From: Octopus bimaculoides
Lineage: Eukaryota
Reading direction: 5' to 3'
Length of the DNA stretch: 64,000 nt
Assembly (NCBI RefSeq): GCF_001194135.2
Contig: NC_068988.1
Coordinates: 31,833,462 to 31,897,461, forward strand
The notes below the pieces were generated by a model that saw nothing but the letters and a program-made list of their open reading frames with translations, was not told the origin of the DNA and ran no database searches. Positions 6,031 through 63,191 of this stretch are shown piece after piece. Each line of letters opens with the position of its first letter. The first letter of the stretch is position 1. Both the position numbers and the translations under genes were made by a program.

Positions 6031-8009
6031 GTGTCAGCATTAGCAATACAATGTTTATGAAGTAATCTCTGGTCCCATTTTACAGATAAAATTTCTAAGT
6101 GGAAGAATAAACTCATGCAAGATTTTTCTTAAAGTTTACATGTATATTATCGTTGTTTTCATCCAAATTGCAGGTCTAGAGCTTTCATTATTTGTTAGAA
6201 ATGAATTTTTCCTTTCTGCCGAGAATTCTAATGCATGAAGAATAATAACGTACATAAATACATACATTAATTTGTTTTCTTTAGGCTGAAATCGATAAAT
6301 GTGTTAACACAAGGTAAAAAAAATTAACGAAGTCAAAATAAGCGAATATGCAGTTCTGTTTCGTGCATGATCACAGTCAATGAAACAAAAGACAGTATGT
6401 CCATTTTTTTTTTTAGTGCGTCAACTATCGACATGGATGTGTGAAAGTCAAATTGACGTCAATAAAGACCCGAGTGGTTGAAACTAAAAATATGAGACCT
6501 TTTGTCCACTGATTCTTTTTCCATTGCCTTCATCATCTATTTGGTAATAAGTTCTTACTTTACTCAATACAAAAGCATAAAAAGAAAATTGTTGAAAAGA
6601 CTGGTTTAACCAATCTACAAAACTTAGTGTGAATGCTCTAAATTAACAGATAGCGTTTCTAGGCAGTGTATTCTACTTTGCAGATTGGGTACTAAGTCGA
6701 AAAAATTTACAACAGTAAATTTATAATGAAAAGGCATGAAAACCTCGTGTCTCGGTTCTATTTCTCTATCAATTTATTAATTTTGTTATAATAAAAATCA
6801 TTAATACTAATCACTGTAAGATAGTAAAAACACAGCCTTAAAAATATCACTCGCAGTAAGATAGTTAAAAGATATAAAATAGACTGTTTTAAAATGTAGA
6901 ATGGTGTTCCTGTTTATTACGTTACTATGACATCAAAACAATATAAGATGTTTATGTTCAGAAATTTCAAAGTAACATCACTAAAACAGAAGCATTATTG
7001 ACTGCAGTTTGAAAAATGCGAAATTTGCAGGTTGTTTGATATTTTTATTATATAATAATATGATAATAGGAGTTCTCATGAAAAAGTCGATTTTGTGAGA
7101 AGAGTTATAAACAAGAATGGAAGATAGAGATAATAAAACCACCTATCATTGCAGGCAAGTTCAGCCTGTCTGCCTGGTTATTGTAATACAAACACAGAGA
7201 TAGACGAACATACACATTAAGAAATAAAAGGATGGGTGGGGGTAAACACACACGCCCACACACATATTAAGTGGAATACTGACACAGCGAAATTTAAAAT
7301 AGATTAATAAACACGGTTACAATAATATTCTTTATCCTTTACACTTTAACTAGCTTTAACTCGAAAGCTGCGGCCATGCTGGGACACCACTGTTAGAATG
7401 TCCTCAAAGAAATACAAACGAGACTTCCAGAGATTGTATTTGTTTAATGATCTTGGGCTAAAAAAATAAGGCAAACAAAAGAACAACGAGAAGAGGGCTT
7501 ATCGAATGACTAGGTGTCTTCTGCATTTATGAAGTTCTTCTCAGACTTTGCCTCATTCCTCGCCCTCCAAGAGCCTGAAAATGTATTTAATCAAATAGAC
7601 GAGATAATAGATTAGCCTAGGTTCTTTCAACAAATTTCATGTCATTGTAAGGTGATATATTTCTTTATCAAGTACATAGAGATCTACAAGTTTTTAACAC
7701 GTTCGTGTTTCCATCAACGATTTAAAAGTAACTTATTTAAAATAGAAAAAAATAAAGATGGAAAAATAAACCGATTGTAGTTTAGAGAATGGTATTTCCA
7801 ACGCATGAAAATTGCTTACATTGTAGAGTTAAAGACGAATACTAGCTGTCATGTAAGATACACATCCATATATTTTATTGCTGAATACTAATAAATGGGA
7901 TTATTGTAGAAATAGTTTCAAAACAAGCACTGTGCTTTGCAAAAAGCACAGATAAGGCTTGTTATCCATGCATAGAACTCAGTCAAAATGTTAAGTTATA
8001 GGCCCAATA

Positions 8010-8750
8010 GAAAAAAGTTTATGTGAGAGGCTCGGATGCTTTACAAAATAAGGACTGGATTGAGCATGCTCATAGTCAACAAGAAGTATAAAAATGAAAA
8101 ATTATGATGTGAATTTGCTCTCTTATAAACCAAGCGTAAGGATCCAGGATATTTTCTAGTGTTCTCGTTACGTATAAGGAGAGAAAATGTATTTTATGAT
8201 GATTAAGGTACCTTAACGGTGGCATGAATATTTTAGTGAAGTGCTAAATCGTTCAGCTACGTTTGACAGATCGTTTTTTTAGAACTCAATCAGATTTCCA
8301 AAGGAAATATTTTCGATGGTCCATCTATTTTCAATAAATTATGAGGTGCTTTGCAACAAATTAAAAACATAAAAATCCCCTTGCATTCATGGTACGTGTC
8401 AGAGAGTGTTGTAAGGCGAAATAGGATGTAAAATTTTCAACAAATTTGTATGCATATATTTTCTAAGAAATGGCTTCTGTTCCCTAAGTTTTGAAAGACA
8501 AGTTGTTGGTGGCGATGTGGAGACAAAAGACTGGCTTAGGCATATGCAAAAATCATCGTAGCCTATCGATCCCCAGCCGTGTAGGAAAATATTAAGCGTA
8601 AATATTCTTGATAGACTCATTGAACACATTCGGTTATACCGTCTACCTGAGTCAGAAGCAGGGTCTCGCGCGTGAAGGTGGAACGCTGACGGGATATATA
8701 CCACTCGACCACTACATTAGCAAATGCTCAGAGCTTAGATTCGGTGACTC
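8010..8750 (+). mobile_element. Decayed RTE-clade LINE fragment (region before RT and RT N-terminus)
   Basis: Frameshifted peptides QNKDWIEHAHSQQE, RWHEYFSEVLNRS, GK/ILSVNILDRLIEHIRLYRLPESEAGSRA and ADGIYTTRPL/KCSE resemble the RTE motifs RWxEHFxxVLNR, GKILARILLNRL, LPESQCGFR and DMIFxxRQLQEKC. Confidence 0.75.
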
Positions 8751-15275: not shown

Positions 15276-15307
<32 letters not shown>

Positions 15308-15668
15308 NNNNNNNNNNNNNNNNNNNNNNNNNNNNNNNNNNNNNNNNNNNNNNNNNNNNNNNNNNNNNNNNNNNNNNNNNNNNNNNNNNNNNNNNNNNNN
15401 NNNNNNNNNNNNNNNNNNNNNNNNNNNNNNNNNNNNNNNNNNNNNNNNNNNNNNNNNNNNNNNNNNNNNNNNNNNNNNNNNNNNNNNNNNNNNNNNNNNN
15501 NNNNNNNNNNNNNNNNNNNNNNNNNNNNNNNNNNNNNNNNNNNNNNNNNNNNNNNNNNNNNNNNNNNNNNNNNNNNNNNNNNNNNNNNNNNNNNNNNNNN
15601 NNNNNNNNNNNNNNNNNNNNNNNNNNNNNNNNNNNNNNNNNNNNNNNNNNNNNNNNNNNNNNNNNNNN

Positions 15669-15722
<54 letters not shown>

Positions 15723-17078: not shown

Positions 17079-17294
17079 TATCCTTTTCTACTCGAGGCAC
17101 AATGCTCGAAATTTGGAGGGGGGGGGACGTCGATCAGATCGACCCAAGTACGCAACTGGTACTTAATTTATCGACCCCGAAATGATGAAAGGCAAAGTCG
17201 ACGTCGGCGGAATTTGAACTCAGAACATAAGGACAGACGGAATACCGCTAAGCATTTCGCCCGGCGTGCTAACGATTCTGCCAGCTCGCCGCCC
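17079..17294 (-). mobile_element. tRNA-derived SINE, family C, apparently full length
   Basis: Minus strand: GGCGAGCTGGCAGAATCGTTAGC head, GAGTTCAAATTCC B-box, central GACTTTGCCTTTCATCATTTCGGGGTCGATAAATTAAGTACCAG (resembles Meta-type SINE domains, from memory), and tail GTAGAAAAGGATA. Confidence 0.88.
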
Positions 17295-17654: not shown

Positions 17655-17825
17655 GTATTGTTTTGCCTGTCTTTACGTTCTGAGTTCAAATTCCGGCGAG
17701 GTTCACTTTGCCTTTCATCATTTCAGGGTCAATAAATTAAGTACCATTTGCGAACTGGGGTCAATCTAATCGACTGGCCTCCTCTCCCAAAATGTCGGGC
17801 TTTGTGCCTAGAGTAGAAAAGAATA
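17655..17825 (+). mobile_element. Family C SINE, 5'-truncated, inverted relative to the copy at 17079-17294
   Basis: GTTCTGAGTTCAAATTCCGGCGAGGTTCACTTTGCCTTTCATCATTTCAGGGTCAATAAATTAAGTACC...GTGCCTAGAGTAGAAAAGAATA. Confidence 0.88.
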
Positions 17826-18710: not shown

Positions 18711-19832
18711 AAATTAAGAAATAGTTACACAGAAAATTTAATTTTCATACTATATAATTTAGCCATTTTCATCCTTTTTTCTGTTTATCTTGTATGAAGT
18801 CTCGAGTGCCACCACTATGCAGATCATAGTTCCAAACTCAAAGTGGTTAAACATCTTCCCATTGCAGCTGAATCATTTAACGTTTTGCATATGTTTCCTT
18901 TTCTCTTCTCCTTTCTAAGTTGTGTCTTTATCGGCATTTTTCGCTTTCATTTCCTACGATGTTCTCGTCTTTCATTCTTGATGTCATGTCATTGTCTAAA
19001 AGGTGAATAGCGCTAGCTATCTCGCCATTAACCACGCACAAGTATTATATTAAATGTAACATAGTTTTGTGATGGAATGGCGGTATTGCGATAATGTGTT
19101 GCCAATATTACGATAATAATCCTTAACGTAAACTAATATCCATGAATATTTTTTTTTTTACCTTAATGTATATTTTCGGTATTACCAACATTTAAATGGC
19201 TATTCAGATTCAGAAATGTTTTCTCAACTGCAATGTTCCCACCGATTCGAAATTCATAATATCATAATGTACTATAATATACGATTTCTATCAAGAGCAC
19301 AAACGTTGTGGAAAGAAGAAAAGGTTATTAAATAGGATATGTGTTCCAATAGCAAGAATGCTATCTTGGTTCTATCAGGAAACTTCACAGAAAAGTTGGA
19401 CTATATTATGTTTGCCAAAGGAAAACAATCACTCAAGAATTTCTCTCCACGACGAACTATCCCGTCTTGAACACAAACCATTGAATATTTCATGATCACC
19501 ACTCTCAGTTGTATTGGGAAGTAATTCCTTTGCAAAATTTATTTTCAGATGTTAGCTGAAATGTTTGTTCCTGGTTTGTTCGAAGAGTACAGACCTTGCC
19601 ATATTTGTCTTAATGTCTTCCATTATTTGTCTTAACCCTCAATCTACCAGAGAACATGCATTTCACTAATTAATAACAGGGTCCAATGGACCCAATATTT
19701 AATTAAATTTTATTCAAGTTACATTATATATGACATCAGGTGAATGAAGAATTACTGTTTCTCACAAATTTTAATAAAAAAATACAGCTTATAGGATATA
19801 TTATAAATTTTAAAATTTATATAAGTACAGAA

Positions 19833-21537
19833 TTACAGCTCTTCATGACAGTGAATGCTGACAACATCGGAATGTTCTTGGCAAACATGGATTTACAATT
19901 CTTACATGATGTCCTTTTCGGGGCCACGCAAAGAACATCCTTTTTTTTCTTCTTTGGCTGAGGAATCTCAAATGAGGTTGAAGATCGTCTTCTTTTCTTG
20001 TTTGGTTAGAGAAATGTTAGCAGGACTAGAAGATTGTTTATCATATTCTTGTTGAGTATTAACTCCAGCAAGTTCCTTTCCTAACCGAATTAAGCACCAT
20101 CTTCTTTTATTCTTGAAACTTTGGAAGTGAAGCTGTTTAGCAACAATGAAAGCATTCACTGCTCTTATATCAATCGTGTTGTAGAATATAACCATAGGCC
20201 ATTTTCGAGACATTGTTTTGCAAGTGTATGTCCATACCAGCTTATCTAGGGTATTTACTCCTACTTTTGTTTTGTTGTAAAATGTAATAACTTCAAGTTT
20301 CTTTTTAGCACTCTTTGAATCAATTAAAGGCTGAGATGTATTGTACTCATAAGTGTGACTACGTAATTTTTCTTGGGACAATAAGATTGGATCATAGAAT
20401 CCTTTTGAAGTCGAAATATTGTGCTGTTGATATCTCTTTCTTTTCCATTTGTGAAAGTACATGGAAGTTCAACTCTGTCCTTTCTAATTGTTCCAACTAA
20501 AGTAGTCTCCTTGCTAAGCAGCTTTCGAGCTTGAAAAAATATCATCACAAGTTATATTGCGACCAGTATTTTCTATTTCTTTTACTAGGTCTTCAACAAC
20601 ATTTGAACCTTGATTTGTCTCTCTCCCTTTTACTGGATCTTTTCCAGTGTAAATTTACATTTTCCAGGCATAATATATTCCACTGTCGCATTTTGCCCAA
20701 ATTTTAATTCCATATTTCCCTGATTTTGAAGGCATATATACTCGGAAAGGGCAGCGTCCTCTGAATGAAACTAATTCTTCATCAACTGTCAGGCATGGAC
20801 ATGGAACATATCCATCTTGCAAATTCTGATTCCACATTTCAAATACTCCTTTTATGGGCTCCATTTTATCATCACTTCTCTTTTTTCTTCTTGCACTAGC
20901 ATCATCAAAACGCATTACTTGTAAAATTTGTTGATATCTTCCCCGGCTCATACATTTGTTGACTATTGGGTGTGGGGTCATCTTCTTGACTCCATCATTC
21001 TGTGACATTTTCATGTTTAGATTTATAAACACCTATAAAAATAATTAGACCCATAAATTTCTTTAGTTCAAACTGATCAATTTCCTTCCATTTGTATTTG
21101 TAAACAACCTGACCTTCAACATTTGTCCATTTACGAATTACTTCAAGAAGATTCTGGCGCATAAACATAGTAAAACATTTTTCAGTGTTATAGCAGGACC
21201 TTTTAGCAAAGCGGGATGGTCCACATTCTTGGCGCACACTATTGCAAGATAGGGTTCTTACTGCTGCTTGAGTAAGAAGATTAGAATGCCAAACTTTTTA
21301 TCGATCTTTAGGAACATATTGCTCATTCATAATTGGGTGGCTTGCAGAGAATTGATTTTGCGTATCTTCATTATCTGATGACACAGAACTGTCCAGCACA
21401 CAATCACTTTCGCCATCATCCCGAGAACAATAGACGGAATCACTACTATCTTCTTCCCATTCTTCATATAATTCCAATAACTTTTTCTATATTTGGTTTT
21501 CACTCAAGTTTTCACGTCTAGGCGTATTGGAAAGCAT
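19833..21537 (-). pseudogene. piggyBac (PGBD4-like) transposase pseudogene
   Basis: ATG at 21537 (MLSNTPRRENLSENQI*), acidic N-terminus, ELKKFMGLIIFIGVYK, MSRGRYQQILQVMRFDD, CLTVDEELVSFRGRCPFRVYMPSKSGKYGIKIW (1st Asp intact), NITCDDIF (2nd Asp intact), GVNTLDK (3rd Asp to Asn), RKWPMVIFY, and a Cys-rich tail (CKNC/VCQEH...C) stopping at 19835-19833. There are in-frame stops at 21489 and 21300 and several frameshifts. Confidence 0.93.
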
Positions 21538-21592
21538 AACAGAACTATATGAAACTTGATAGCAAACTAAAGGCATATATTGCTCTCTCACA

Positions 21593-21696
21593 TATTTATA
21601 CTCTCCTGAATGATGATGCAATATATTGTAAGGATTGCATCATCGCATAGAAATATTGCATCACGTTATAACCTAGCAGATTTAAGATGATGCAAT
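21593..21696 (-). promoter_or_regulatory. Putative transposase promoter: 4x C/EBP-ATF (TGATGCAAT) elements plus TATA box
   Basis: TGATGCAAT at 21614-21622 and 21688-21696; ATTGCATCA at 21634-21642 and 21655-21663; minus-strand TATAAATA at 21600-21593; ATG at 21537. Confidence 0.55.
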
Positions 21697-22327
21697 ACCA
21701 CACAAATTTACAGGGATATTTTTATAATTTTTCCTATTTTATCTAAAATTCAGCAACTAAATTGAATACGATTTTATCTATTTTATATCTGATAAATATC
21801 TAGGAAAATATTTTATACTACATTTATTCTGTTTAGAATAAGGGTATTGTCTGAATTCAATTCGGGGGTCCGATGGACCCGTACGTAATTAATGTATAAA
21901 GTGAAATTTTCTAGCTTTTATAAATATACGGAAAATTTCCCATTTGACAAAGAAAAGAGAGTCAAGTAAAAATAAGAGTCACGAGAAATCAGCAGAATCA
22001 AAGAATATAAACAGCAGGAAAGAGCAACTGAAAAGCACTGAAATGACTTTACTGGACCCATTGGTAAACGGAAGGTTAATGTCTTCACCTCGTTCACTAT
22101 GACTACTAGAGATAGGTTCCTTAGGTACCAAAGAAGTGATCATTTTAATATCTACCTCCAGGTTACCAGCATCTCGGGATGAAGGGAAACTGTCTAATTT
22201 GAAAATAAAATGTGAATGAAATAAAATAGAAAAACTTCCGACTTCATGGCAGTCATCATATCTAAAACGGAATATGAGATAATATGCATTTATAAGCAGA
22301 AACATCTAAAATCAAAAACAAACTGCT

Positions 22328-22480
22328 GGTGTGTTTACGTCCCCGTAACTTAGCGACAAAAAAGCCCTATAGAATACGTCCCGGACCTTTAAAACAATTA
22401 TTGGGGTCGATTCATTCAACTAAAATCTTTCGATGACGTGCCCCAGCATGGCTTCAGTGTAATAATGGAAACAAGTAAGA
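22328..22480 (+). mobile_element. Family A SINE 3' half, degenerate
   Basis: GGTGTGTTTACGTCCCCGTAACTTAGCG...GGGGTCGATT...CCCCAGCATGGC...GGAAACAAGTAAGA matches the tail of the copy at 4847-5200. Confidence 0.75.
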
Positions 22481-23733
22481 GAACAAAAAAAATAAAGAAT
22501 TTTTGATATCGTGTTAGACAGTTGGTGAGTAATGAAAAATACCTGACTGAGCTAACTAGAAGAACACAAAGAAATATCCGTTAATACAGACCAAATAGCC
22601 ATGTTGATTGTAACTTCGCAGAATTTAATCAATAAAGAATACATCAACAATCTTATACTGGACACTATACAAGTATTATAAATGCCTTCAGAAAATGCAT
22701 AACACATGCTGTGATGTGCTTCTGGGAATGCCAAAGTGAATGCTCTCTTAGAATATAACATTTCAGCAAAATATGGAGATTAAGGTAAATCGTCAAGATA
22801 TTATGGTGAAATATCTGGAGGAAACAGATGCCATTTAATCTTTGAAAGAATTCTAGCTTGCATCAATATATGCATACATGTAAAACACTTGGGTCCCGAA
22901 GTATCGGTTTCAACACTGTCAATACTGCAACAATCTGAAATTTAAACGAACATTATTAATTCTACGCCGCAAGAAACTCCTTAGAGCATAAGGATCGTAC
23001 AGAGCAACCGATTTTATATGCGCACCCTTCAATGATTGAAGAACTGCCAACCTTCATATCACATACACTCTTCGCATTCCACTCTCGTCACTTTCTACGA
23101 ATCCAGGCCAATCAGCTCAATACCGAGACTGGTCAGAAACTGAAAGTAAATGGTCATTGAGGTCTTCAATAAATCCGCAGAAATATCAAAATTGTTTTAA
23201 TCTATTGCTCGTTATCCGTTTATATGCCAATTACTTTGCACTTCTTCGAGAATTATGAAAACGGTGATGACAGATGAATTATGTAATTACTGACCCTGCA
23301 AAAGGATTCAGTCAAATCACCATCACTCATACTCATCTCCTTTAAACCGAAGGTATATCGAACAATGTAGATAAAAACAAAAACCAAACAAACAAACTCT
23401 AAAGCATGGACGCTACCGGTATATCATAGATCATCATGAGTCCGCTCAACAACAACTGACCAGTTGATCGGGGAGTTATAAACATTTCAGTAATGATTTG
23501 TATGTGGTCGCATGAAGTGTTTTAATGGTATTGTTGCCATTGCTGCAGATGTAAAGTAACTTTTCTCTATTATTGCATCATTAATTAGTAAGATGTTCTA
23601 ATGCCAGGTGCGGCAAAGTATAAATGGGTGTAAGAATAAACAAAACATTAAGCTCTGCGTGCATATGTATGTATATGAGATTTATGAAAATTGATTTTAA
23701 TAGGATAATGTTAAAAAGAAAACTGTAATGGTG

Positions 23734-34473: not shown

Positions 34474-35714
34474 ACTCACACACACACACACGATATATAT
34501 ATANNNNNNNNNNNNNNNNNNNNNNNNNNNNNNNNNNNNNNNNNNNNNNNNNNNNNNNNNNNNNNNNNNNNNNNNNNNNNNNNNNNNNNNNNNNNNNNNN
34601 NNNNNNNNNNNNNNNNNNNNNNNNNNNNNNNNNNNNNNNNNNNNNNNNNNNNNNNNNNNNNNNNNNNNNNNNNNNNNNNNNNNNNNNNNNNNNNNNNNNN
34701 NNNNNNNNNNNNNNNNNNNNNNNNNNNNNNNNNNNNNNNNNNNNNNNNNNNNNNNNNNNNNNNNNNNNNNNNNNNNNNNNNNNNNNNNNNNNNNNNNNNN
34801 NNNNNNNNNNNNNNNNNNNNNNNNNNNNNNNNNNNNNNNNNNNNNNNNNNNNNNNNNNNNNNNNNNNNNNNNNNNNNNNNNNNNNNNNNNNNNNNNNNNN
34901 NNNNNNNNNNNNNNNNNNNNNNNNNNNNNNNNNNNNNNNNNNNNNNNNNNNNNNNNNNNNNNNNNNNNNNNNNNNNNNNNNNNNNNNNNNNNNNNNNNNN
35001 NNNNNNNNNNNNNNNNNNNNNNNNNNNNNNNNNNNNNNNNNNNNNNNNNNNNNNNNNNNNNNNNNNNNNNNNNNNNNNNNNNTATATACATACACACAGA
35101 CATAGCTGCATACATGCATATATATATATATATGCAGATATAACATTATTGTTCTTTCTTACGAAATATATAGAACTGCTAGAAAGCTGTGTCTTGAACC
35201 CGAGACAAAAGATAAGGATTAAGATACAAACAGTATCAAGAATGAGATTTTATAAGGATAGCTTTCCTGAGAAAGGGGACATAGTTCACATGGCTTGTAA
35301 GATCTATTAATTTTCTTACCATGACATGAACTCTAGTAATGGCCGTTGAAAGAGAAATTCCTCCAACTGTATTATATACTTCATATACCATTTATATTTT
35401 AAAAAACACACCGATCTCTATGGATCTTTTAATTGAGATTCTTAACCGCTCTTAATTTCAGTACAGAAAATCATTTTTCACTCCTCTTTTTATCAGCCCT
35501 CTTTTTCACACACTCCCTTCCATACGTATCCTACATGGATTTTATTTACATGTATTTTTATGTATATTTTTATTTTATAAATATTTATAAAAATATTCAT
35601 ATGTGTCGATATGTATACGCATTCATATCTGTCGATATATGTATATGCACTTTCAGTCGAATTTATAAATGTATGAGTATGATTGCCTAATTTGAGTTTA
35701 TACCTTAATCCTTA

Positions 35715-52979: not shown

Positions 52980-54820
52980 CAGAATTTGAAAATGCACTGC
53001 GAATAGTTAAAATGCAGTCATTATGTTTCACGATTTAACCGGTTTTATGGTATACGCTGATTTTCAAAAGTTGAGATAGAAAGACGCGGGTTATACCGCA
53101 ATTGTCTTGCTTCTGGTTAGTATTTGAAGTTTGTCGTATTTTTAAGGGGGTTATATATCTGAAAATAGTATATATACTATTCTCAGTGCATTGTCTACTT
53201 CTATTTTCTGTATATTNNNNNNNNNNNNNNNNNNNNNNNNNNNNNNNNNNNNNNNNNNNNNNNNNNNNNNNNNNNNNNNNNNNNNNNNNNNNNNNNNNNN
53301 NNNNNNNNNNNNNNNNNNNNNNNNNNNNNNNNNNNNNNNNNNNNNNNNNNNNNNNNNNNNNNNNNNNNNNNNNNNNNNNNNNNNNNNNNNNNNNNNNNNN
53401 NNNNNNNNNNNNNNNNNNNNNNNNNNNNNNNNNNNNNNNNNNNNNNNNNNNNNNNNNNNNNNNNNNNNNNNNNNNNNNNNNNNNNNNNNNNNNNNNNNNN
53501 NNNNNNNNNNNNNNNNNNNNNNNNNNNNNNNNNNNNNNNNNNNNNNNNNNNNNNNNNNNNNNNNNNNNNNNNNNNNNNNNNNNNNNNNNNNNNNNNNNNN
53601 NNNNNNNNNNNNNNNNNNNNNNNNNNNNNNNNNNNNNNNNNNNNNNNNNNNNNNNNNNNNNNNNNNNNNNNNNNNNNNNNNNNNNNNNNNNNNNNNNNNN
53701 NNNNNNNNNNNNNNNNNNNNNNNNNNNNNNNNNNNNNNNNNNNNNNNNNNNNNNNNNNNNNNNNNNNNNNNNNNNNNNNNNNNNNNNNNNNNNNNNNNNN
53801 NNNNNNNNNNNNNNNNNNNNNNNNNNNNNNNNNNNNNNNNNNNNNNNNNNNNNNNNNNNNNNNNNNNNNNNNNNNNNNNNNNNNNNNNNNNNNNNNNNNN
53901 NNNNNNNNNNNNNTATATATATATATATATATTATTGTGTGTTGGGTGGGCCATTGCGCCAAGAATAATAACACACGTACTGGTAGTTGCACACCTACAT
54001 TAGACATTGAACCAAGGGTCTCGTCATTTATATTACAGCTGAAACCAGTGTCTTTGAATTCACGGGATATTATTGATATGCGTGTTGCGGTAAATTATCT
54101 TCCTATTTCCTGATCAAAACCCTTCTATTGTATAGATTTCTATCACAATAGTAAAACATCAAAATTTTTAAGCTTGCATAGTCAAATATCAGGAATACTC
54201 GTGTGATGTTCCTGTTAGCTCGAACCACATCTCAAAGGTCACTCCACTTCTTCGTTGTAATATTGATAAATTGGATGCTGTATTTATTTACCGCACAAAA
54301 GATCAGTAATACAACATTATGCTTAGTGTATCTTATTTAACGCTTCATGAGAAGAATTAATGATCAAATATAAATATCAGTTTAGTTGCAACCTTCAGGA
54401 ATTTCGTACACAATATCAATGTTGTGATTAATTCAGTGAACAAATTAGTAACGGTCGATTGGAGAGACGAACGCTACTCTCCTGGAGAGATTTTATTTAG
54501 AATTCAATGTTTCATCCGTTGAGATATTAAATATTGCTTAGAGTAGGGATTGTGTTCTACTTGAGAAAGCCAAAACCAGAAGATTCAACGTGCGCTTGTG
54601 CACACACACACACTTATTTTATAGAGTTATTTTTCAGTGTGTTTAATGTGATGGGACTTGACTGTTGCATCTAACATATCAAGCGTATGGCACACAAACA
54701 CATTGATAAATGTACAGAAACGGGACGAGCATATTTAAGTCAAGATTAGTGAGAGTAAGAATCAAAGATAGTAATTCGACTTTACACGCATCACACGCTT
54801 AAAGGGAGGGGAATAAAGAT

Positions 54821-62176: not shown

Positions 62177-63056
62177 TATATATATNNNNNNNNNNNNNNN
62201 NNNNNNNNNNNNNNNNNNNNNNNNNNNNNNNNNNNNNNNNNNNNNNNNNNNNNNNNNNNNNNNNNNNNNNNNNNNNNNNNNNNNNNNNNNNNNNNNNNNN
62301 NNNNNNNNNNNNNNNNNNNNNNNNNNNNNNNNNNNNNNNNNNNNNNNNNNNNNNNNNNNNNNNNNNNNNNNNNNNNNNNNNNNNNNNNNNNNNNNNNNNN
62401 NNNNNNNNNNNNNNNNNNNNNNNNNNNNNNNNNNNNNNNNNNNNNNNNNNNNNNNNNNNNNNNNNNNNNNNNNNNNNNNNNNNNNNNNNNNNNNNNNNNN
62501 NNNNNNNNNNNNNNNNNNNNNNNNNNNNNNNNNNNNNNNNNNNNNNNNNNNNNNNNNNNNNNNNNNNNNNNNNNNNNNNNNNNNNNNNNNNNNNNNNNNN
62601 NNNNNNNNNNNNNNNNNNNNNNNNNNNNNNNNNNNNNNNNNNNNNNNNNNNNNNNNNNNNNNNNNNNNNNNNNNNNNNNNNNNNNNNNNNNNNNNNNNNN
62701 NNNNNNNNNNNNNNNNNNNNNNNNNNNNNNNNNNNNNNNNNNNNNNNNNNNNNNNNNNNNNNNNNNNNNNNNNNNNNNNNNNNNNNNNNNNNNNNNNNNN
62801 NNNNNNNNNNNNNNNNNNNNNNNNNNNNNNNNNNNNNNNNNNNNNNNNNNNNNNNNNNNNNNNNNNNNNNNNNNNNNNNNNNNNNNNNNNNNNNNNNNNN
62901 NNNNNNNNNNNNNNNNNNNNNNNNNNNNNNNNNNNNNNNNNNNNNNNNNNNNNNNNNNNNNNNNNNNNNNNNNNNNNNNNNNNNNNNNNNNNNNNNNNNN
63001 NNNNNNNNNNNNNNNNNNNNNNNNNNNNNNNNNNNNNNNNNNNNNNNNNNNNNNNN

Positions 63057-63191
63057 GTGTGGGCGTGCGTGCTTCTGCGTGTGTATGAGTGTGCATGTGT
63101 GTGTGAGTGTGTGAATGTGTGAGTGAGTGTGCGTGTGCCTATTTCTGTGTGTGTGTGTGTGAGTGAGTGAGTGTGTGTGTGTGTGCGTGTG

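What the first reader, a model, noticed from the sequence alone, without database searches (positions are those of the whole stretch)
21537..21696. Four perfect C/EBP-ATF4 response elements plus a TATA box upstream of the piggyBac transposase: candidate stress-inducible transposon promoter
Seen: TGATGCAAT or its reverse complement occurs four times in 83 bp (21614, 21634, 21655, 21688), 77-159 bp upstream of the ATG at 21537. A correctly oriented TATAAATA begins 14 bp downstream of the nearest copy. All four copies are intact although the coding region is riddled with lesions. I saw no other perfect copy in the window and none at the opposite end of the element, which argues against terminal binding repeats. 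Established: ATTGCATCA is the amino-acid-response (CARE) core bound by ATF4-C/EBP heterodimers in the integrated stress response, and molluscs have both partners (Aplysia CREB2/ATF4 and C/EBP act in long-term plasticity). Inference: the element wired its transposase to host stress or plasticity signalling, or the host has kept the cluster as an enhancer, and family copies could have spread ATF4-responsive modules.
Basis: partly seen in the sequence, partly recalled or inferred. Interest (0 to 1): 0.8.

Follow-up and report, generated by a model that had tools for sequence, protein, structure and literature searches.

The report
Octopus piggyBac promoter with bZIP sites
A dead octopus "jumping gene" still carries what looks like its own on-switch: four binding sites of the kind used by stress-linked C/EBP–ATF4 regulators, next to a TATA box. 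The sites were inherited from the family's ancestor, and nothing shows that the host has kept them.

Summary
TGATGCAAT or its complement occurs at 21614, 21634, 21655 and 21688, and TATAAATA (21600-21593, minus strand) lies 14 bp downstream. It is the only non-tandem 9-mer clustered like this in the window. The element is a 2,440-bp piggyBac pseudogene (19636-22075) flanked by TTAA.

Six independent same-family copies from Octopus vulgaris and O. sinensis carry all four sites, the TATA box and an initiator-like motif at matching positions. The cluster is therefore ancestral, not a local duplication.

Corrections:
- The family consensus of site 3 is TGACGCAAT. The window's "perfect" copy is a CpG-to-TpG change.
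- The ATG at 21537 is private to this copy. The ancestral start is at 21525-21523.
- A fifth perfect motif lies at 23572.
- The motif columns are not significantly better conserved than their flanks (p=0.13).

Four related families (47-58% amino-acid identity) keep the terminal repeats, a GGGTCCAATGGACCC palindrome at both ends and a TATA box, but have no such sites. The palindrome is the likelier transposase-binding site.

Best reading: a family-specific upstream activating region of the transposase promoter, built from C/EBP–ATF-type bZIP sites. Binding by ATF4 and induction by stress remain untested. Moderate interest.

The parts
19632..19635 (.). TTAA target-site duplication at the 3' end of the element
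   Evidence: Read directly. Homology to the other copies stops here.
19636..19652 (-). 3' terminal inverted repeat (on the + strand: CCCTCAATCTACCAGAG)
   Evidence: The family consensus 3' end is ...CTCTGGTAGACCAAGGG|TTAA. Related elements in L002 and L015 have similar repeats.
19679..19693 (.). 3' subterminal palindrome GGGTCCAATGGACCC, the likely transposase-binding site
   Evidence: It is conserved in family copies and in families with only 47-58% amino-acid identity (L001, L006, L015; variant in L002-5).
19833..21537 (-). piggyBac transposase pseudogene with several stops and frameshifts. The ancestral ATG corresponds to 21525-21523.
   Evidence: PF13843 hits on four ORF fragments. Three-frame translation. 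Family alignment showing GTG at 21537 and ATG at 21525 in the other copies.
21564..21570 (-). Initiator-like TTAGTTT (consensus TTAGTCT, fits YYANWYY). The predicted +1 A is at 21568, 32 nt from the first T of the TATA box.
   Evidence: Read. Conserved in the family consensus. No transcript data.
21593..21600 (-). TATA box TATAAATA
   Evidence: Intact in 5 of 7 aligned copies. All four related families have a TATA box in the equivalent 5' region.
21614..21622 (-). bZIP composite site 4, ATTGCATCA (extended form ATTGCATCATC)
   Evidence: Consensus ATTGCATCA, intact in 4 of 6 independent copies.
21634..21642 (-). bZIP composite site 3. TGATGCAAT in the window, TGACGCAAT in the family consensus.
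   Evidence: Four of 6 independent copies have CG here. The CpG decay rate in the family is 30%.
21655..21663 (-). bZIP composite site 2, TGATGCAAT
   Evidence: Intact in 4 of 6 independent copies.
21688..21696 (-). bZIP composite site 1, ATTGCATCA
   Evidence: Intact in 4 of 6 independent copies.
21866..21880 (.). Inner 5' palindrome GGGTCCGATGGACCC
   Evidence: Family consensus GGGTCCATCGGACCC. Relatives have a second palindrome about 180 bp inside the 5' end.
22044..22075 (-). 5' terminal inverted repeat with the decayed palindrome next to it. Family consensus: CCTTCTGTCTACCAATGGGTCCAATGGAC.
22076..22079 (.). TTAA target-site duplication at the 5' end
   Evidence: In all six independent copies the flanks become unrelated exactly outside this TTAA.

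Best explanation
The cluster is the upstream activating region of the transposase promoter of an extinct Octopus piggyBac family.

In the ancestral element, four composite bZIP sites sat about 45-130 bp upstream of a TATA-plus-initiator core promoter. Three were TGATGCAAT and one was TGACGCAAT. Their orientations were mixed and their spacing was 33, 21 and 20 bp. The transposase ATG lay about 42 nt downstream of the predicted start site.

A host bZIP dimer of the C/EBP/ATF class would bind these sites and drive transposase transcription. The ATF4-C/EBP(gamma) type is the best sequence match. [quoted passage not shown]

The copy in the window is a neutrally decaying relic, not a maintained regulatory element.

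Shown: the anatomy, the ancestry in the family, the family specificity and the match to the motif. Inferred: promoter function, the identity of the bound factor and stress inducibility.
For: - Motifs, TATA box and geometry were read directly.
- The cluster is unique in the window and far beyond chance.
- All four sites, the TATA box and the initiator-like motif sit at matching positions in six independent copies from O. vulgaris and O. sinensis. Each copy is about 6-10% from the consensus.
- The cluster lies only on the 5' side, between the inner palindrome and the TATA box. T. ni piggyBac has its promoter in the same region (PMC1919496).
- Four related families keep the terminal repeats, palindromes and TATA box but lack the sites. 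In the octopus family the palindrome-to-TATA spacer is 150-220 nt longer and holds the sites, which suggests an added regulatory module.
- The shared flanks (G at -2, R at -1, A or C at +1) extend the match. Human ATF4 prefers ATGATGCAAT (PMC10637723).
- ATF4 pairs with a C/EBPgamma homologue in Drosophila (PMC13585082).
- C/EBP, CREB2 and ApAF heterodimers exist in a mollusc, Aplysia (PMC2064337).
Against: - There are no expression, binding or chromatin data.
- The bound factor is assigned from a motif match alone, and other bZIP dimers could use these sites (C/EBP homodimers, C/EBP-PAR, CREB/ATF).
- In Aplysia the ATF4 homologue is described as a repressor.
- A transposon needs germline expression, and nothing shows that these factors act there.
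- Only six independent copies were available. All came from species other than the window's, so a subfamily difference at site 3 cannot be separated from private decay.
Confidence: 0.55

Rival explanations
1. The sites bind a host bZIP factor that helps transposition or repair of the donor site rather than transcription. [quoted passage not shown]
For: A C/EBP-class heterodimer is the sequence-specific binder of P-element terminal repeats, and IRBP18 also pairs with dATF4 (PMC6946401; PMC7776569). From memory, unverified here: the outer P-element repeat, CATGATGAAATAAC, contains a TGATGAAAT motif of the same type.
Against: The octopus sites lie 380-460 bp from the 5' tip and are absent from the 3' end and from the terminal repeats. 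They abut a TATA box. Related families transpose without them.
Confidence: 0.1
2. The sites are accessory binding sites for the element's own transposase. They would serve autoregulation of its promoter or assembly of the left end. The match to the bZIP motif would then be coincidental.
For: The sites form two inverted pairs, and three of them share an 11-mer (ATTGCATCATC). Other transposons carry subterminal transposase sites near their promoters; the P element has 10-bp sites.
Against: The sites are on one end only. They are absent from four related families whose transposases are 47-58% identical. The GGGTCCAATGGACCC palindrome, in contrast, is conserved at both ends in all of those families and is the obvious transposase site. 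From memory: this parallels the palindromic 19-bp internal repeat of T. ni piggyBac. The flanks fit the bZIP preference.
Confidence: 0.1
3. The host has kept this particular cluster as an ATF4- or C/EBP-responsive enhancer.
For: All four motifs read as perfect sites in this copy although the ORF is broken.
Against: Motif columns are not significantly better conserved than the rest of the 5' region (6.0% against 10.2%, p=0.13) and are equal to their immediate flanks. The chance that three ancestral sites survive is about 0.13, and the fourth change is a routine CpG decay. The other copies have lost one or two sites each.
Confidence: 0.03
4. The cluster is a chance occurrence or a recent local duplication.
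For: None beyond the AT-rich, repeat-rich context.
Against: The window-wide probability is about 1e-7, and this is the only non-tandem 9-mer cluster in the window. The sites differ in flanks and orientation. They are present at matching positions in six independent copies in other species.
Confidence: 0.01

Closest known systems
Promoter in the 5' terminal region of T. ni piggyBac
   Same: The transposase's own promoter lies inside the 5' end, upstream of a single ORF, in an element with TTAA duplications and asymmetric subterminal repeats (PMC1919496).
   Different: This is a different piggyBac lineage. Here the upstream region holds four clustered C/EBP-ATF-type sites that four related families lack. 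I found no report of such sites in a piggyBac promoter in the searches run, which were limited.
C/EBP-ATF response elements (CARE/AARE) of ATF4 target genes such as CHOP, ASNS and aminoacyl-tRNA synthetases
   Same: The core is identical, TGATGCAAT, and the flanks fit the preferred ATGATGCAAT (PMC10637723; PMC5175342 listed).
   Different: Cellular genes usually carry one or two such sites. Here four sit within 83 bp in a transposon. The consensus of one site is the CpG form TGACGCAAT. No binding or induction has been shown.
IRBP18/Xrp1 bZIP heterodimer bound to P-element terminal inverted repeats
   Same: A C/EBP-class host bZIP factor recognises a DNA transposon. The same C/EBPgamma homologue partners with ATF4 (PMC6946401; PMC13585082).
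   Different: In the P element the sites are inside the terminal repeats at both ends and act in transposition and repair. Here they are internal, on one end only, and next to a TATA box.
Transposable elements whose promoters carry stress-responsive factor sites (plant ONSEN and Tnt1; Drosophila elements with stress-factor sites)
   Same: The concept is the same: a mobile element borrows a host stress pathway for its own transcription and can scatter the sites (PMC7329337 and PMC6649756, listed).
   Different: Those cases are mostly retrotransposons and use other factors (HSF and others). The octopus case is a DNA transposon, and the factor is only predicted.

Membership tests
piggyBac superfamily transposon | DDE_Tnp_1_7 (PF13843) transposase | tested here: met
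   Four ORF fragments hit PF13843, with E-values down to 3e-24. Homologues are named piggyBac-derived.
piggyBac superfamily transposon | TTAA target-site duplication and terminal inverted repeats starting with CC | tested here: met
   TTAA at 19632-35 and 22076-79. In six copies the flanks diverge exactly outside TTAA. Repeats: CCCTCAATCTACC and CCTTCCGTTTACC.
piggyBac superfamily transposon | Cysteine-rich C-terminal domain | tested here: inconclusive
   A C/H-rich tail is visible in the window and in the consensus but is broken by stops. It was not modelled.
[quoted passage not shown] | Core sequence TGATGNAAN | tested here: met
   Four exact TGATGCAAT in the window. The consensus has three of these plus TGACGCAAT.
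[quoted passage not shown] | Flank preference (A or G before TGATG; ATGATGCAAT is the preferred form) | tested here: met
   In the family consensus the base at -1 is G, G, A, A and the base at -2 is G in all four sites. Compared with PMC10637723.
[quoted passage not shown] | Bound by ATF4-C/EBP heterodimers | not testable with these tools
   Needs gel-shift, DAP-seq or ChIP with Octopus proteins.
[quoted passage not shown] | Confers induction by amino-acid limitation, ER stress or eIF2alpha phosphorylation | not testable with these tools
   Needs a reporter assay or RNA-seq.
[quoted passage not shown] | The host encodes both partners | not tested
   Literature only, for another mollusc: Aplysia ApC/EBP, ApCREB2 and ApAF (PMC2064337). 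Octopus genes were not searched.
TATA + initiator Pol II core promoter | TATA box about 30 nt upstream of a YYANWYY initiator, on the gene's strand | tested here: met
   TATAAATA at 21600-21593. TTAGTTT with its A at 21568, which puts the first T of the TATA box at -32. Both are in the family consensus.
TATA + initiator Pol II core promoter | A mapped transcription start | not testable with these tools
   No transcript data available.
Transposase-binding subterminal repeats | Present at both ends and conserved among related elements | tested here: not met
   No TGATGCAAT-like site in the 3' end or its consensus. None in L001, L002-5, L006 or L015. The GGGTCCAATGGACCC palindrome does meet this test.
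Host-factor site in transposon ends (P-element IRBP type) | Located within the terminal inverted repeats of both ends | tested here: not met
   The sites lie 380-460 bp inside the 5' end only.
Exapted transposon-derived enhancer | Motifs better conserved than neutral flanks | tested here: not met
   6.0% against 10.2% divergence, permutation p=0.13. The immediate flanks are equally conserved. Only six independent copies, none orthologous.

The most novel reading that the evidence does not exclude
An Octopus piggyBac lineage added a module of four ATF4-C/EBP sites to its promoter. Transposase expression, and so transposition, was then switched on by the integrated stress response. Its scattered copies seeded ATF4- or C/EBP-responsive elements across cephalopod genomes. 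To my knowledge this would be the first DNA transposon shown to be wired to that pathway.
Probability: 0.2. Interest if true: 0.65.

Novelty: new member of a known kind. Interest (0 to 1): 0.35.

Why it matters
Little is known about how animal cut-and-paste transposons control their own transcription. Here the family comparison separates two parts. One is shared by the whole clade: terminal repeats, palindromes and a TATA box. The other was added by one lineage: a block of C/EBP-ATF-type sites. If those sites work as predicted, they give a concrete example of a DNA transposon coupling its mobility to a host stress or C/EBP pathway. They would also be a possible source of dispersed responsive elements in cephalopod genomes. 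This copy is a decaying relic, so its value is as a record of the ancestral promoter, not as a functional locus.

Tried and rejected
- **Other copies in the window:** none found (blastn).
- **First guess at the 5' end (about 21920):** wrong. Homology among the copies runs to 22075.
- **Exact look-up of seven window ORFs in the protein collection:** none found.
- **Search with the full-length transposase:** gave only relatives of 60% amino-acid identity or less. A second search with the N-terminal 178 aa was needed to reach same-family Octopus copies.
- **Extra conservation of the motifs:** not significant.
- **The motif in relatives:** absent from the 5' regions of L001, L002-5, L006 and L015. 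The near-matches in L015 lie in coding sequence.
- **Majority consensus of the ORF:** open for only 368 aa before a frameshift. Too few copies for a reliable full consensus.
- **Literature:** searching the bare motif returned mostly primers. The Francis et al. 2016 paper on IRBP was not held. I found no paper on piggyBac elements native to octopus.
- **Neighbouring ORFs and a nearby repeat:** no Pfam or tRNA hit.

Full report
**1. The observation**

Exact TGATGCAAT or ATTGCATCA occurs at 21614(+), 21634(-), 21655(-) and 21688(+). Read on the minus strand, which is the transposase strand, the order is ATTGCATCA, TGATGCAAT, TGATGCAAT, ATTGCATCA. After 13 nt comes TATAAATA (21600-21593), and then the window's ATG at 21537. 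Three sites share the 11-mer ATTGCATCATC.

The dinucleotide shuffles give about 1.7 matches per window, or about 0.002 per 83 bp. Four or more in one such span, anywhere in the window, has a probability of about 1e-7. ATTGCATCA is the only 9-mer outside tandem or microsatellite arrays with at least 4 non-overlapping copies in 83 bp. One-mismatch variants are not enriched window-wide (24 found, 31 expected).

**2. The element**

ORF fragments on the minus strand between 19968 and 21237 hit PF13843, the piggyBac transposase domain. The reading frame is interrupted by several stops and frameshifts. The window holds no second copy.

Comparison with other copies places the ends at TTAA|19636...22075|TTAA. 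In all six independent copies the flanks become unrelated exactly outside the TTAA. The element is 2,440 bp.

A palindrome, GGGTCCAATGGACCC, occurs three times:
- next to the 5' terminal repeat, decayed in the window;
- about 200 bp inside the 5' end (21866-21880);
- about 45 bp inside the 3' end (19679-19693).

The motif cluster therefore sits 380-460 bp inside the 5' end, between the inner palindrome and the TATA box.

**3. Family copies**

The full-length conceptual protein found only relatives of 60% amino-acid identity or less. A search with the N-terminal 178 aa found annotated fragments from Octopus vulgaris, O. sinensis and O. bimaculoides at 61-84% identity. The window is therefore from an octopus. 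Its many N-gaps flanked by microsatellites fit a draft assembly, but the species was not verified.

Fetching the loci gave these copies at about 81-87% nucleotide identity:
- full or nearly full copies: L007, L009, L011, and L014, which holds two tandemly duplicated copies;
- partial copies: L010, which keeps the 5' region, and L008, L012 and L013, which do not.

In the alignment of the 5' region all four sites, the TATA box and the sequence downstream are at matching positions. The consensus sites are ATTGCATCA, TGATGCAAT, TGACGCAAT and ATTGCATCA. Each is intact in 4 of 6 independent copies. The cluster is therefore ancestral to the family, not a local duplication.

**4. Corrections to the finding**

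- *Site 3.* It is TGACGCAAT in 4 of 6 independent copies and TGATGCAAT only in the window. CpG decay to TG or CA affects 30% of consensus CpG cells in the family, against 6.8% substitution elsewhere. The window's fourth 'perfect' motif is most simply a CpG decay. With only one copy from the window's species, a subfamily difference cannot be excluded. Both forms are C/EBP-CRE/ATF composite sites.
- *Start codon.* The window's ATG at 21537 is GTG in every other copy. The consensus ATG (ATGCCTAGACGT...) aligns with window 21525-21523, which is now ACG.
- *Conservation.* Motif columns diverge by 6.0%, against 10.2% for the rest of the 5' non-coding region. The permutation p is 0.13, and neighbouring columns are equally conserved.
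- *Intactness.* This copy is 7.3% from the consensus. Three ancestral 9-mers all surviving at that divergence has a probability of about 0.13. Intact motifs in a broken element are therefore not evidence of selection.

**5. Core promoter**

Thirty-two nucleotides downstream of the first T of the TATA box lies TTAGTTT (consensus TTAGTCT). It fits the metazoan initiator pattern YYANWYY. The predicted +1 is at 21568, about 42 nt upstream of the ancestral ATG. The centre-to-centre spacing of the sites is 33, 21 and 20 bp, close to whole helical turns. All of this is sequence-level only; no transcript data were available.

**6. Related families**

Four related families were examined: L001; L002-L005; L006; and L015 (47-58% amino-acid identity). 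All of them have:
- the TTAA|CCCT...GTCTACC terminal repeat;
- the palindrome next to the 5' repeat, again about 180 bp inside, and at the 3' end (GGGTCCAATGGACCC, or the variant GGGGTCAAATTGACCCC);
- a TATA box downstream of the inner palindrome.

None has a TGATGCAAT-like site in its 5' region. The near-matches in L015 lie in coding sequence. They carry other short repeats instead: TCAAAAGAGTT three to five times in L001-L005, and GTGACATCA twice in L006.

In the octopus family the spacer from inner palindrome to TATA box is about 270 nt, against about 45-115 nt in the relatives. The extra sequence holds GATA-like repeats and the four sites.

Two conclusions follow. The palindrome is conserved at both ends across the clade, so it is the likely transposase-binding site. 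By analogy from memory, it resembles the palindromic 19-bp internal repeat of T. ni piggyBac. The bZIP cluster is a lineage-specific addition in the place where a promoter is expected. T. ni piggyBac has its promoter in the 5' terminal region (PMC1919496).

**7. What binds**

TGATGCAAT is the C/EBP-ATF composite core. An MPRA and ChIP study of human ATF4 reports ATGATGCAAT as the preferred 10-mer (PMC10637723). In the family consensus two sites have A and two have G before TGATG, and all four have G at -2. In Drosophila, ATF4 (crc) needs the C/EBPgamma homologue Irbp18 (PMC13585082). Aplysia has C/EBP, CREB2 (the ATF4 homologue, described there as a repressor) and ApAF, which heterodimerise (PMC2064337).

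Assigning the sites to an ATF4-C/EBP dimer is therefore reasonable, but it rests on the motif alone. C/EBP with other partners would fit nearly as well. Stress inducibility is a further inference.

**8. Rivals**

- *A host bZIP factor aiding transposition.* IRBP18/Xrp1 does this at the P-element terminal repeats (PMC6946401). It is an interesting precedent for C/EBP-class factors on a DNA transposon. The octopus sites, however, are internal, on one end only, and next to a TATA box.
- *Accessory transposase sites.* The inverted-pair layout allows this. The sites are absent from the 3' end and from the relatives, and the palindrome is the better candidate.
- *Host exaptation of this copy.* No support (section 4).
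- *Chance or local duplication.* Refuted (sections 1 and 3).

**9. Verdict**

The cluster is a real, ancestral, family-specific module beside a canonical core promoter, and its sequence is that of C/EBP-ATF sites. Dependence on ATF4, stress or plasticity coupling, and retention by the host are untested or unsupported.

Transposable elements that carry host, stress-linked factor sites in their promoters are a known kind (reviews listed). A piggyBac with such a block appears to be a new member of that kind. Interest is moderate (0.35).

Noticed in passing
window 21732-21795 (minus strand); family consensus positions 286-352: GATA-like repeats lie just upstream of the bZIP cluster: TTATCAGATA, then AGATAAAAT twice. 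They are conserved in the family consensus and lie in the extra spacer that related families lack. They may be a second class of factor site in the same module.
   Followed up: partly
window 21535-21537 and 21523-21525: The window's ATG (21537) is a private GTG-to-ATG change. The ancestral ATG, four codons downstream in the same frame, has become ACG in this copy.
   Followed up: yes
window 23572-23580: A fifth perfect ATTGCATCA, about 1.5 kb outside the element. An isolated match is unremarkable given the shuffles (about 1.7 matches per window).
   Followed up: yes
L002 587-680, L001 320-365: Related piggyBac families carry three to five direct copies of TCAAAAGAGTT just upstream of the transposase ATG and downstream of their TATA box. 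This is a different lineage-specific short-repeat cluster of unknown role.
   Followed up: partly
L014 3077-5529 and about 6477-8742: In O. sinensis two copies of the element, with identical 5' flanks, lie about 3.4 kb apart. This is a tandem segmental duplication that includes the transposon, not two insertions.
   Followed up: partly
window 22324-22498: A stretch next to the element matches several places in the Octopus loci (L007, L008, L013, L014) at 66-78% identity. It is probably an interspersed repeat. ARAGORN found no tRNA gene in 22100-22700.
   Followed up: partly
window 17112-17236 and 17667-17791: A 125-nt inverted repeat (84% complementary) with 430 nt between the arms. Possibly a foldback or MITE-like element, or two inverted copies of a short repeat.
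   Followed up: no
window, many sites (e.g. 15300-15700, 34500-35100, 53200-53950, 62200-63100): Numerous runs of N flanked by TA, CA or CT microsatellites. GC is about 33-35% outside the gaps. This is typical of a draft cephalopod assembly.
   Followed up: no
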